From: Octopus bimaculoides
Taxonomy: Eukaryota
Assembly (NCBI RefSeq): GCF_001194135.2
Contig: NC_068995.1
Coordinates: forward strand, 2,620,477-2,684,476
Direction of reading: 5' to 3'
Length of the DNA stretch: 64,000 bases
Position numbers and translations under genes: made by a program. The notes beneath the pieces are model-generated. The model was given only the letters and a program-made list of their open reading frames with translations. It searched no databases and was not told the origin of the DNA. Below, in pieces: positions 4,404 to 4,743 of the stretch (position 1 is the stretch's first letter; each line of letters begins with the position of its first letter).

Positions 4404-4743
4404 TCAACTTAATGTGACAGTCCCATGAAAGGGAAGAATGCTACTATTATTTAGCCCTAGGAAACACCATTTCCTGTTGGACTTGGCACATTTCTTGTGT
4501 CCTTATGTTTTCAAAGTGGAGATAAGCACTTCTGCCCAGCAAAGCCAGCATCCAGAGACTAGTTTCAGAGTCATTGCTCTTCATCAGTCTGGAGTAGCAT
4601 GGCTTTGCTGGGTGGAGGTGCTTGTCTCCACTTTGAAAACATAAGGACACAGGAAATGTGTCAAGTCCAACAGGAAACGGTGTTTCCTAGGGCTAAATAA
4701 CAGTAGCATTCTTCCCTTTCATGGGATTGTCACATTAAATTGA
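4404..4743. repeat. 340-bp foldback element: 144-bp inverted arms flanking the hammerhead
   Basis: 4404-4547 is the reverse complement of 4600-4743, with 10 mismatches counted by hand and no gaps. Confidence 0.95.
4552..4592 (-). ncRNA. Minimal type I hammerhead ribozyme (Penelope-type), intact consensus
   Basis: The minus strand reads CCAGA-CUGAUGA-AGAG-caauga-CUCU-GAAA-CUAG-UC-UCUGG. This gives a 5-bp stem I, full core, 4-bp stem II, palindromic stem III (ACUAGU) and a GUC cleavage triplet. Confidence 0.85.

What the first reader, a model, noticed from the sequence alone, without database searches (positions are those of the whole stretch)
4552..4592. Fully intact minimal hammerhead ribozyme at the apex of a long palindrome inside the spondin gene
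Seen: the minus strand reads CCAGA CUGAUGA AGAG caauga CUCU GAAA CUAG UC/UCUGG. Every core nucleotide, stems I and II, a palindromic helix III and a GUC cleavage site are intact, and the 144-bp arms extend stem I into a rod. Established: minimal type I hammerheads with palindromic helix III are the form associated with Penelope-like retroelements and cleave mainly as dimers. Inference: this is a small non-coding, self-cleaving foldback retroelement (rod-like, retrozyme/viroid-like architecture). It lies antisense to the host, so it would cut antisense transcripts rather than the spondin pre-mRNA.
Basis: partly seen in the sequence, partly recalled or inferred. Interest (0 to 1): 0.85.

Follow-up and report, generated by a model that had tools for sequence, protein, structure and literature searches.

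The report
Hammerhead ribozyme capping an intronic palindrome
A complete type I hammerhead ribozyme motif lies at the tip of a 350-bp palindrome in a spondin intron; it is most likely a relic of a known kind of ribozyme-carrying mobile repeat, in an unusually perfect hairpin arrangement.

Summary
Arms 4401-4547 and 4600-4746 are 93% complementary. On the minus strand the 52 nt between them read as a full type I hammerhead: helix I 6 bp, CUGAUGA, helix II 4 bp with a 6-nt loop, GAAA, palindromic CUAG, GUC, with cleavage between 4557 and 4556.

No Rfam hammerhead model detects it. A covariance model I built from five published type I hammerheads scores it at 35.3 bits (rough E about 2e-9). The same model finds a second, degenerate hammerhead at 8292..8240, also on the minus strand. 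Background in the window stays at or below 13.7 bits.

The design is the canonical satellite/retrozyme type, which depends on dimers. Pair 10.1-11.1 is A-U, not the usual G-C.

The locus lies in an intron between two Spond_N exons, antisense to the gene, as claimed.

The retroelement status is not shown. I found no second copy, no Penelope-like gene in the window and only an ambiguous target-site duplication. The hairpin is also far more perfectly paired than four experimentally studied retrozymes.

Best reading (confidence 0.5): a relic head-to-head insertion of a hammerhead-bearing non-autonomous retroelement. It is a new member of a known kind, of moderate interest.

The parts
4399..4749 (-). 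Whole palindromic element (candidate limits, 351 bp, GC 42%). Termini read TGTT...AACA if the flanking ATAGTA copies are a target-site duplication.
   Evidence: The outer limits are uncertain by a few bases.
4600..4746 (-). 5' arm on the ribozyme strand. In the model proposed here it is the inverted, 5'-truncated copy.
   Evidence: 147 nt, 93% complementary to 4401-4547, with no indels. All 11 differences are transitions.
4401..4547 (-). 3' arm on the ribozyme strand, the body downstream of the hammerhead.
4548..4599 (-). Central non-palindromic hammerhead domain. My covariance model matches 4548-4596 within it.
   Evidence: Model R1, built from five published type I hammerheads, scores 35.3 bits (rough E 1.8e-9) over the full model length.
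4594..4600 (-). Loop 1, 5' side: AUGCUAC. The UAC lies directly 5' of helix I, as GUAC does in the Schistosoma-derived N79 ribozyme.
   Evidence: The three 1-nt indels between the arms cluster here.
4588..4593 (-). Helix I, 3' strand: UCCAGA.
   Evidence: Pairs with 4551-4556 over 6 bp.
4581..4587 (-). Core C3-A9: CUGAUGA.
4567..4580 (-). Helix II AGAG/CUCU (4 bp, with A10.1-U11.1) and loop 2 CAAUGA (6 nt).
   Evidence: Loop 2 has the same length and the same CAA...A pattern as CAAAUA (N79) and CAAAAA (Ax330).
4563..4566 (-). Core G12 A13 A14 A15.1: GAAA.
4558..4563 (-). ACUAGU, the self-complementary helix III segment. As a monomer it is 1 bp plus the tetraloop CUAG; between two copies it is a 6-bp helix.
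   Evidence: (duplex -6.2 kcal/mol).
4556..4557 (-). Predicted cleavage site: C17 at 4557, cut, then U1.1 at 4556.
   Evidence: Follows from the hammerhead numbering applied to the sequence. Cleavage itself was not tested.
4551..4556 (-). Helix I, 5' strand: UCUGGA.
4547..4550 (-). Loop 1, 3' side: UGCU.
4393..4398 (.). ATAGTA, the left copy of a candidate 6-bp target-site duplication.
   Evidence: It is ambiguous because the same bases also extend the inverted match (ATCTACTA / TAGTAGAT) and the right flank is a tandem repeat.
4750..4755 (.). ATAGTA, the right copy of the candidate target-site duplication.
1009..1161 (+). Host exon segment encoding Spondin_N, profile positions 72-122. It is the upstream boundary of the intron that holds the element.
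   Evidence: Pfam PF06468, E 4.8e-13.
5238..5357 (+). Host exon segment encoding Spondin_N, profile positions 120-159. It is the downstream boundary of the intron.
   Evidence: Pfam PF06468, E 6.8e-16.

Best explanation
**What it is.** The minus strand of 4548-4599 encodes a complete type I hammerhead ribozyme domain of the canonical metazoan (satellite/retrozyme) design. It lies between two 147-nt arms that are inverted copies of each other.

**Most likely origin.** The locus is a relic of one insertion of a short, non-coding, hammerhead-bearing retroelement of the kind thought to be mobilised by Penelope-like elements. The palindrome is then a head-to-head pair. A fuller copy (hammerhead domain plus a body of about 150 nt, 4599 down to 4399) has an inverted, 5'-truncated copy of the same body (4749 down to 4600) immediately upstream. 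This is the arrangement described as typical of Penelope-type insertions. It fits an enzyme that nicks and extends both target strands.

**How it would work.**
- In a minus-strand transcript the arms extend helix I into a hairpin of about 155 bp, and the ribozyme would cut between C4557 and U4556.
- As a monomer, helix III is only one base pair plus a palindromic tetraloop. Efficient cutting therefore needs a second copy to form a double hammerhead.
- That double hammerhead would require swapping the long arms between two molecules. I therefore expect a lone locus to cleave poorly.
- On the sense strand the locus is only a long hairpin inside the spondin pre-mRNA, with no ribozyme.

**Shown:** the motif, the palindrome, the intronic antisense position, and the presence of a second hammerhead-bearing stretch nearby.

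**Inferred:** retrotransposition, the twin-copy origin of the arms, and weak or no present-day activity.
For: **The motif is a real hammerhead-type sequence.**
- All core positions and helices are present.
- A model built only from coral, mussel, two axolotl and Schistosoma-derived type I hammerheads scores it at 35.3 bits, against a window background of 13.7 bits or less.
- Chance motifs of this quality are expected at about 0.003 per window or less.

**The design matches the satellite/retrozyme type.**
- Helix sizes are 6 bp (I) and 4 bp (II), with a 6-nt loop 2 and a 1-bp helix III closed by a palindromic tetraloop, as in axolotl HHR_Amex1.
- The only indels between the arms cluster right after the 6-bp helix I, where loop 1 of a canonical type I hammerhead sits.

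**The genome carries this class of element.**
- The same model finds a second hammerhead at 8292..8240 on the minus strand (33.4 bits). It lies in a 281-bp stretch bracketed by a perfect 12-nt direct repeat, as expected for a solo insertion.

**The element fits published retrozyme dimensions and distribution.**
- It is 351 bp with 42% GC, within published retrozyme ranges of 170-400 nt and under 50% GC.
- Solo monomers are common, and about 43% of Xenopus copies overlap introns.

**The inverted arrangement has a published precedent.**
- Inverted 5'-truncated copies next to a fuller copy are typical of Penelope-type insertions (PMC8557442).
- A Penelope-like enzyme cleaves and extends both DNA strands in vitro (PMC11167929).
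- The arms are in perfect register and end at the same outer position.
Against: - **No second copy found.** There is no other copy of the arms or flanks in the 64-kb window, and nothing real in the one metagenome scan (one arm 20-mer) or the two viral-contig scans. No animal genome collection was available, so repetitiveness is untested.
- **No autonomous partner seen.** No reverse transcriptase or GIY-YIG frame is apparent in the window (by eye; selected frames by Pfam).
- **Rfam is negative.** No Rfam hammerhead model matches.
- **One near-invariant pair differs.** Pair 10.1-11.1 is A-U.
- **The fold is unlike studied retrozymes.** It gives -0.725 kcal/mol per nt, 88% paired and a 65-bp helix. 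Four experimentally studied retrozymes give -0.21 to -0.41, 66-71% and 8-10 bp.
- **The target-site duplication is weak evidence.** It is short and ambiguous.
- **The junction is not a simple join.** Three extra bases on one side of the apex are not what a direct join of two identical cDNAs would give, unless the join lay outside the native helix I extension.
- **Translated searches found nothing.** The reading frames across the element have no relatives.
Confidence: 0.5

Rival explanations
1. A DNA-level miniature inverted-repeat or foldback transposon. Its long terminal inverted repeats are the arms and its loop happens to carry a hammerhead, inherited or captured. It would move by cut-and-paste, not through RNA.
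For: The 147-bp arms are near-perfect and have no indels. A possible 6-bp direct repeat, ATAGTA, abuts termini TGTT...AACA. The pairing is far more perfect than in studied retrozymes. A mariner-like transposase remnant in the window shows that DNA transposons are present in this genome.
Against: There is no other copy in 64 kb. The 6-bp repeat is ambiguous. No MITE with a hammerhead in its loop turned up in my literature search. The asymmetric, structured 52-nt centre with canonical hammerhead dimensions is not expected of a MITE loop.
Confidence: 0.15
2. A non-mobile local inverted duplication, from replication or repair fold-back, that formed around a pre-existing solo hammerhead relic.
For: The element is single-copy as far as could be tested. 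The arms look like once-identical copies that later diverged only by point substitutions, 11 of 147. Solo hammerhead relics exist nearby.
Against: Both arms stop at the same outer position, next to a possible direct repeat. The symmetry centre coincides with the ribozyme's own helices. That coincidence is more natural if the ribozyme domain directed the join.
Confidence: 0.15
3. One reading: an active rod-like, viroid- or retrozyme-like self-cleaving RNA element whose perfect rod is itself the functional, selected form.
For: The core is intact after about 7% arm divergence. The size is like mollusc retrozymes, 350-390 nt. The double-hammerhead dimer is thermodynamically accessible for a 71-nt fragment: -51.2 kcal/mol against -49.6 for two monomers.
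Against: There is one ribozyme per locus and no tandem partner, so no unit-length RNA can be released. The 11 arm differences give G-U pairs on either strand without bias (4 minus, 7 plus), so there is no sign of selection on the ribozyme-strand fold. The fold is unlike studied retrozymes. With 31 apex bases and a few percent divergence, an intact core is not evidence of selection.
Confidence: 0.08
4. A chance hammerhead look-alike at the tip of an unrelated palindrome. The palindrome supplies helices I and II for free, so only the core needs to arise by chance.
For: The symmetry centre of the palindrome (about 4572) nearly coincides with loop 2 (4571-4576). Rfam sees no hammerhead. Pair 10.1-11.1 is non-canonical.
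Against: The core alone carries about 22 bits that the palindrome does not supply. In 20 Mb of random sequence there were no hits with a palindromic helix III. The site scores 35 bits on a literature-built model against 13.7 or less for background. Loop 1, loop 2 and helix III have canonical sizes. A second hammerhead 3.7 kb away shows the motif class is common in this genome.
Confidence: 0.07
5. A host small-RNA gene: a microRNA or hairpin-RNA precursor, or a C/D-box snoRNA-like kink-turn RNA (UGAUGA...CUGA with a terminal stem).
For: Rfam mir-147 scores 31.4 bits, E 5.7e-5, in a 451-nt search. Several C/D snoRNA models score 12-15 bits on the apex.
Against: All are far below the gathering scores (57 for mir-147, 35-42 for the snoRNA models). 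The boxes are only 12 nt apart in a unit of about 35 nt, too short for a snoRNA. The microRNA match is a generic long-hairpin match.
Confidence: 0.03

Closest known systems
Canonical metazoan type I hammerheads of satellite DNA and non-LTR retrozymes (Cervera & de la Pena 2020, PMC7229834), especially axolotl HHR_Amex1
   Same: Type I topology, with helix I 6 bp, helix II 4 bp and a 6-nt loop 2. Helix III is a single pair closed by a palindromic tetraloop: CUAG here, CAUG in Ax330. The ribozyme is therefore dimer-dependent. The unit is about 350 bp with low GC, and solo copies occur in introns.
   Different: There is no tandem repeat here. Pair 10.1-11.1 is A-U. The body is a near-perfect 147-bp inverted repeat (88% paired, 65-bp helix) rather than a moderately paired, branched or rod-like RNA (66-71% paired, helices of 10 bp or less). 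There is no sequence similarity outside the motif.
Penelope-like element insertions and their pseudo-LTR hammerheads (Cervera & de la Pena 2014, PMC4209133; Craig et al. 2021, PMC8557442; PMC11167929)
   Same: Type I hammerhead with palindromic positions 15.2-16.2. Insertions often carry an inverted 5'-truncated copy directly upstream of the fuller copy, which produces inverted repeats. The enzyme nicks and extends both strands.
   Different: Penelope-type minimal hammerheads have helix II of 6-8 bp, helix I of 4-5 bp and a bulged base after A9. None of these holds here. No RT/GIY-YIG frame is apparent in the window, and no pseudo-LTR relationship could be tested.
Schistosoma Sm-alpha hammerhead (as the engineered N79 derivative, sequence in PMC12550524)
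   Same: Helix I is 6 bp and is preceded by (G)UAC. Helix II is 4 bp. Loop 2 is 6 nt: CAAAUA there, CAAUGA here.
   Different: Sm-alpha is a SINE-like repeat without long inverted arms. It has G10.1-C11.1. Whether the loop-loop contacts are kept here is untested.
Miniature inverted-repeat and foldback transposons
   Same: About 350 bp, non-coding, with long terminal inverted repeats and a possible short direct repeat at the ends.
   Different: No family, transposase link or fixed target-site duplication is shown. The centre is a structured ribozyme domain.

Membership tests
Hammerhead ribozyme (general) | Conserved core: C3 U4 G5 A6 N7 G8 A9, G12 A13 A14, A15.1-U16.1, and H17 at the cleavage site | tested here: met
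   CUGAUGA at 4587-4581, GAAA at 4566-4563, UC at 4558-4557.
Hammerhead ribozyme (general) | Three helices around the core | tested here: met
   Helix I is 6 bp and helix II is 4 bp. Helix III is 1 bp plus a tetraloop as a monomer and 6 bp (ACUAGU) between two copies.
Hammerhead ribozyme (general) | G10.1-C11.1 pair at the base of helix II (near-universal) | tested here: not met
   The pair is A10.1-U11.1. A U-U mismatch at this position is reported for the axolotl HHR_Amex2 motif, carried by Rtz_353, which still self-cleaves weakly.
Hammerhead ribozyme (general) | Match to curated Rfam hammerhead covariance models | tested here: not met
   No hammerhead family matched at gathering score or at E <= 10. 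The second motif at 8240-8292 is missed too.
Hammerhead ribozyme (general) | Match to a covariance model of experimentally studied type I hammerheads | tested here: met
   Model R1, built from five published sequences with none from this window, scores 35.3 bits (rough E 1.8e-9) over the full model length. The next non-hammerhead hit scores 13.7 bits.
Hammerhead ribozyme (general) | Site-specific self-cleavage | not testable with these tools
   This needs in vitro transcription or RNA end mapping.
Non-LTR retrozyme / satellite type I hammerhead | Helix I 6 bp, helix II 4 bp, helix III 1-2 bp capped by a 2-4-nt palindromic loop | tested here: met
   Definition from PMC4209133. Sequence. Compare Ax330, GAAA-CAUG-UC.
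Non-LTR retrozyme / satellite type I hammerhead | Conserved loop 1 - loop 2 tertiary contacts | tested here: inconclusive
   An internal loop starts right after the 6-bp helix I, with UAC on the 5' side. Loop 2 is CAAUGA, against CAAAUA and CAAAAA in published ribozymes. The contact residues themselves could not be checked.
Non-LTR retrozyme / satellite type I hammerhead | Tandem repeats of 150-450 bp, each with a hammerhead | tested here: not met
   This is a single unit with no adjacent repeat of it. Solo monomers are known for such families.
Non-LTR retrozyme / satellite type I hammerhead | Unit of about 170-400 nt, GC under 50% | tested here: met
   351 bp, GC 0.42.
Non-LTR retrozyme / satellite type I hammerhead | Fold comparable to studied retrozyme RNAs | tested here: not met
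   88% paired, -0.725 kcal/mol per nt and a 65-bp helix, against 66-71%, -0.21 to -0.41 and 8-10 bp for the coral, mussel and two axolotl retrozymes.
Non-LTR retrozyme / satellite type I hammerhead | Expression as linear and circular RNAs | not testable with these tools
   No transcriptome data were available.
Penelope-like element pseudo-LTR minimal hammerhead | Helix II 6-8 bp, helix I 4-5 bp, unpaired base between A9 and 10.1 | tested here: not met
   Helix II is 4 bp and helix I is 6 bp. The base after A9 pairs with U11.1.
Penelope-like element pseudo-LTR minimal hammerhead | Palindromic positions 15.2-16.2 / loop 3 | tested here: met
   C-UA-G; ACUAGU is self-complementary.
Penelope-like element pseudo-LTR minimal hammerhead | Location in a terminal repeat flanking an RT plus GIY-YIG reading frame | tested here: not met
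   No such frame appears among the open frames of 75 aa or more in the window (inspected by eye; selected frames by Pfam). A genome-wide test was not possible.
Penelope-like element pseudo-LTR minimal hammerhead | Inverted 5'-truncated copy adjoining a fuller copy | tested here: inconclusive
   The geometry fits. With a single locus it cannot be told apart from a MITE or a local duplication.
MITE / foldback DNA transposon | Terminal inverted repeats, a fixed-length target-site duplication and many copies | tested here: inconclusive
   The inverted repeats are present. The 6-bp ATAGTA repeat is ambiguous. No other copy is in the window, and the genome was not searchable.
C/D-box snoRNA | C box RUGAUGA and D box CUGA brought together by a terminal stem, in an RNA of about 60 nt or more | tested here: not met
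   Both boxes and a stem are present, but only 12 nt apart. Rfam scores are 12-15 bits against gathering scores of 35-42.
mir-147 microRNA precursor | Rfam gathering score of 57 bits | tested here: not met
   31.4 bits.

The most novel reading that the evidence does not exclude
The locus represents a family of "hairpin retrozymes", in which a dimer-dependent type I hammerhead caps a near-perfect double-stranded RNA rod of about 150 bp. Ribozyme cutting at the hairpin tip would open the loop. That would yield a long dsRNA with defined ends, which could feed Dicer or ADAR pathways or serve as a self-priming retrotransposition intermediate. This would link ribozyme-bearing repeats to small-RNA or editing biology.
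Probability: 0.08. Interest if true: 0.65.

Novelty: new member of a known kind. Interest (0 to 1): 0.33.

Why it matters
Type I hammerheads in animal genomes are a known and very abundant class, tied to retrozymes and Penelope-like elements. One more copy is not surprising in itself.

Three points are of some use:
- Two hammerhead motifs in this window escape every Rfam hammerhead model. A small model built from published retrozyme ribozymes finds both clearly. Rfam-based annotation may therefore undercount hammerheads in genomes like this one.
- This copy is embedded in an unusually perfect 147-bp inverted repeat. If that form recurs in the genome, it would record how such elements integrate, by head-to-head twin priming.
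- Transcribed in either direction, the locus would place a long double-stranded RNA hairpin inside a spondin intron. That could matter for RNA editing or splicing there.

None of this changes current understanding unless the palindromic form proves to be a family.

Tried and rejected
- **Rfam cmscan.** I ran it on the whole window at gathering score, then at E <= 10 on 451 nt and on 76 nt. There was no hammerhead hit, only weak snoRNA-like and mir-147 matches. The second motif gave the same result.
- **Self-BLAST.** The element and both flanks were searched against the window. There is no other copy.
- **Translated frames as a proxy for other copies.** I searched the two long reading frames that cross the palindrome against the 5.8-billion protein set. 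Neither had any homologue.
- **Viral-contig scans.** The ribozyme pattern and an arm 20-mer both found nothing.
- **Identifying the organism.** A TSR exon gave only one relative, at 43% identity, with no name. I suspect a cephalopod from remembered SINE-like sequences, but this is not tested.
- **Literature search for the exact ribozyme sequence.** It returned only unrelated primer matches.
- **First MAFFT alignment of published hammerheads.** It misaligned helix III (alignment A1, discarded). I padded the variable loops with N to force a gap-free alignment.
- **First dimer energy evaluation.** It used a kissing geometry that the software cannot score. I replaced it with the nested strand-swapped double hammerhead.
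- **Larger poly(A)-tailed retroposon.** I looked for direct repeats that would bracket one ending at the T25 run (4186-4210). Only a 9-mer at chance level turned up.
- **Similarity between the two hammerhead-bearing stretches outside the motif.** There is none above shuffles.
- **Descriptor hit at 15153-15196.** It is at chance level, and the covariance model does not find it.
- **ARAGORN.** No tRNA-like sequence was found in the window.
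Full report
**1. The observation**

The repeat finder reports inverted arms at 4401-4547 and 4600-4746. They are 147 nt long and 93% complementary, with 52 nt between them. A gapped alignment carries the pairing on to 4556/4588, at the cost of three single-base indels that all lie within 9 nt of the apex. The minus-strand RNA folds at -259.5 kcal/mol, 31 standard deviations below shuffles.

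Coordinates of every hammerhead part were checked by script:
- helix I: UCCAGA (4593-4588) pairing with UCUGGA (4556-4551), 6 bp
- core: CUGAUGA (4587-4581)
- helix II: AGAG/CUCU with loop CAAUGA (4580-4567)
- core: GAAA (4566-4563)
- helix III loop: CUAG (4562-4559)
- U16.1 and C17: 4558-4557

Cleavage would fall between 4557 and 4556.

The pair at 10.1-11.1 is A-U rather than the nearly universal G-C. As a monomer, helix III is only the A15.1-U16.1 pair closing a CUAG tetraloop.

**2. Is it more than chance?**

My own descriptor scan found this site and one weak site at 15153-15196.

I then scanned 20 Mb of first-order Markov sequence with the window's composition, on both strands.
- The loose descriptor gives about 0.04 hits per 64-kb window.
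- Requiring helix I >= 6 bp and helix II >= 4 bp gives about 0.003.
- Adding a palindromic helix III gave no hit at all.

The weak site is therefore at chance level, and the finding is not.

One caveat applies. The symmetry centre of the palindrome (about 4572) nearly coincides with loop 2, so the palindrome supplies helices I and II for free. The core, about 22 bits, is still not explained by symmetry. The two sides of the core do not align as decayed complements either: 4 matches in 10 positions, with 3 gaps.

**3. Model-based tests**

No Rfam hammerhead family matches at gathering score on the whole window, or at E <= 10 on 451 nt, or on 76 nt. The only matches there are weak C/D-snoRNA-like hits of 12-15 bits, caused by UGAUGA...CUGA, and a generic hairpin match to mir-147 (31.4 bits against a gathering score of 57).

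I then took five published type I hammerheads:
- coral Amil224, mussel Mg353 and axolotl Ax353 and Ax330, from the supplement of PMC7229834
- the Schistosoma-derived N79, from PMC12550524

I aligned them with the variable loops padded with N, gave the alignment the textbook structure, and built covariance model R1. No sequence from this window went into the model.

Searching the window gave two clear hits and nothing else:
- the finding's site at 4596..4548 (-), 35.3 bits, rough E 1.8e-9
- a second site at 8292..8240 (-), 33.4 bits
- with filters off, the best other match scores 13.7 bits

So the motif is a good match to experimentally studied animal hammerheads. The Rfam models simply do not see this variant, and they miss the second one too. 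I cannot say exactly why. The very short helix III is the likely reason.

**4. What kind of hammerhead it is**

Cervera and de la Pena define two animal designs.
- Canonical type I: helix I 6 bp, helix II 4 bp, loop-loop contacts, and helix III of 1-2 bp capped by a 2-4-nt palindromic loop. It is active as a dimer.
- Penelope-associated minimal: helix II 6-8 bp, helix I 4-5 bp, and a bulged base between A9 and 10.1 (PMC4209133).

The site here has the canonical design.
[quoted passage not shown] That motif reads GAAA-CAUG-UC with loop 2 CAAAAA. The site here reads GAAA-CUAG-UC with loop 2 CAAUGA.
- As in N79 (GUAC-AUCCAG-CUGAUGA, loop 2 CAAAUA), a UAC lies directly 5' of a 6-bp helix I.
- The only indels between the two arms are here, forming an internal loop where loop 1 belongs.

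The inference of dimer dependence stands.

**5. Context**

The host gene claim is correct. Pfam finds the following, all on the + strand:
- Spondin_N, profile positions 72-122, at about 1009-1161
- Spondin_N, profile positions 120-159, at about 5238-5357
- spondin-type TSP1 repeats and a Kunitz domain at 7360-13090

The element lies in the intron between the two Spondin_N exons, antisense to the gene.

The genome is AT-rich (GC 35%), depleted in CpG (observed/expected 0.44), full of microsatellites and broken by assembly gaps. The organism could not be identified.

**6. The second hammerhead**

The site at 8292..8240 (-) reads UUCACA-CUGAUAA-UGGC-UAAACA-GCUA-GAAA-C-AUUGAU-G-UC-UGGGAA.
- It has a G8-to-A change that should inactivate it, and one mismatch in helix I.
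- It lies in a 281-bp stretch (8100-8380) bracketed by a perfect 12-nt direct repeat, CTTTCTTAAATG, at 8088-8099 and 8381-8392. That is what a solo insertion with a target-site duplication looks like.
- It shares nothing with the first element outside the motif.
- It is not notably structured.
- Relative to the first ribozyme, all four helix II pairs differ yet still pair.

Two unrelated hammerhead-bearing stretches within 4 kb suggest that this genome is rich in such elements. That strongly favours a genuine hammerhead lineage over a chance motif.

**7. What the palindrome is**

This is where the evidence runs out. No animal genome collection was available, and every indirect route to other copies failed.

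*What the sequence shows.*
- The arms are in perfect register with no indels. They differ at 11 of 147 positions, all transitions.
- Four of these differences give G-U pairs in the minus-strand RNA and seven in the plus-strand RNA. There is thus no bias towards preserving the ribozyme-strand fold.
- Folded as a circle, the 351-nt unit gives 88% paired, -0.725 kcal/mol per nt and a 65-bp uninterrupted helix. The four studied retrozymes give 66-71%, -0.21 to -0.41 and 8-10 bp.
- This is the signature of a DNA-level inverted duplication that has since aged. It is not that of an RNA rod shaped by selection.
- A 6-bp direct repeat, ATAGTA, abuts termini TGTT...AACA. The same bases also extend the inverted match, and the right flank is a degenerate tandem repeat that contains this junction. 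I therefore treat the target-site duplication as ambiguous.

*Proposed origin.* The literature offers a ready explanation.
- A purified Penelope-like enzyme cleaves and extends both target strands and starts reverse transcription at fixed sites near the RNA 3' end (PMC11167929).
- Animal retrozymes are argued to be non-autonomous derivatives of Penelope terminal repeats.

On this basis, a short RNA with the hammerhead domain at its 5' end and a body of about 150 nt could be copied from both nicks and joined head to head. That would give what is seen: a single asymmetric ribozyme domain between two arms in perfect register that end at the same outer base.

This is an inference. The three extra bases beside helix I mean the join cannot have been at the ribozyme's own helix I. 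It must have lain outside the native helix I extension.

**8. How it would work**

A minus-strand transcript would fold into the long hairpin with the ribozyme at its tip.
- The secondary structure compatible with catalysis costs only 1.8 kcal/mol more than the minimum-free-energy fold of a 71-nt fragment. The minimum-energy fold pairs AGACU with AGUCU and so sequesters C3, U4 and C17.
- The double hammerhead, in which ACUAGU of two molecules pairs and the helix I strands are exchanged, is slightly more stable than two monomers: -51.2 against -49.6 kcal/mol.
- For the full element, however, it would require swapping arms of about 150 bp between molecules.
- Published monomers of this design cleave poorly: 6% in an hour for the axolotl Rtz_331 monomer, which carries HHR_Amex1.

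I therefore expect weak or no cleavage from this lone locus. With one ribozyme and no tandem partner, no unit-length or circular RNA can be released.

The sense pre-mRNA merely contains a long hairpin.

**9. Verdict**

- It is of the satellite/retrozyme design rather than the Penelope minimal design.
- Its status as a retroelement is plausible but untested.
- The viroid-like rod reading is disfavoured by the fold comparison.

It is a new member of a known kind. The only unusual feature is the near-perfect inverted-repeat setting, and its significance depends on a genome-wide copy census that I could not run.

Noticed in passing
window 8240-8292 (-), with 8088-8099 and 8381-8392: A second type I hammerhead-like motif scores 33.4 bits on my literature-built model. 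Its core reads CUGAUAA (G8 to A), so it is probably inactive. It lies in a 281-bp stretch bracketed by a perfect 12-nt direct repeat, CTTTCTTAAATG, a candidate target-site duplication. It is also antisense to the spondin gene, in the next intron. It is unrelated in sequence to the first element, and Rfam does not detect it.
   Followed up: yes
window 4401-4547 versus 4600-4746: All 11 substitutions between the palindrome arms are transitions, and only one lies at a CpG. Four give G-U in the minus-strand RNA and seven in the plus-strand RNA. The cause could be an ordinary mutation spectrum, deamination, or A-to-I editing of a double-stranded RNA intermediate. I could not decide between these.
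   Followed up: partly
window 4511-4636 (+): The palindrome scores 31.4 bits (E 5.7e-5 in a 451-nt search) against Rfam mir-147, below the gathering score of 57. This looks like a generic long-hairpin match.
   Followed up: partly
window 4744-4930: Degenerate 26-35-bp tandem repeats lie directly to the right of the palindrome, each with a small hairpin (ACAAT-N5-ATTGT). The first unit overlaps the palindrome end and the candidate target-site duplication. Their relation to the element is unknown.
   Followed up: partly
window 4186-4210: A run of 25 T (poly(A) on the ribozyme strand) lies about 190 nt downstream of the palindrome. No convincing direct repeats bracket a larger retroposon there.
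   Followed up: partly
window 38817-39302 (+): A mariner/Tc1-like transposase remnant. It has weak Pfam matches to Transposase_1 (E 3e-4) and DDE_3 (E 3e-3), both below the curated cut-offs.
   Followed up: partly
window 2671-3060 (-), 32328-32999 (+), 38098-38469 (+), 41851-42132 (+), 48393-48656 (-): A recurrent repeat family is recognisable from a shared translated frame (...HGLDGLTRAGK...LDALPNTNH...). A second family (NPCQHGKQTLNDDDD) occurs near 8000, 40159 and 62196. A third (SSNPTKV[D/N]F...) occurs at 5580-5867, 11243-12019, 25915-26406 and 27093-27338. None is identified. From memory, the third resembles a cephalopod SINE.
   Followed up: no
window 2373-2906 (+) and 42330-42632 (+): Open frames with motifs typical of LINE reverse-transcriptase C-terminal regions (RLHWVGHVMRM...GRPRKTW). 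There is no Pfam match.
   Followed up: no
window 15153-15196 (-): A loose hammerhead-descriptor hit with helix I 4 bp, helix II 3 bp and no credible helix III. It is at chance level in the random-sequence control, and the covariance model does not find it.
   Followed up: yes
window 57429-58361 (+): A long open frame of 311 aa ends in an Arg/Ser-rich tail (RSRSRSSSPSYSRSKSP...). It is probably an exon of an SR-related protein gene downstream of the spondin gene. There is no Pfam match.
   Followed up: no
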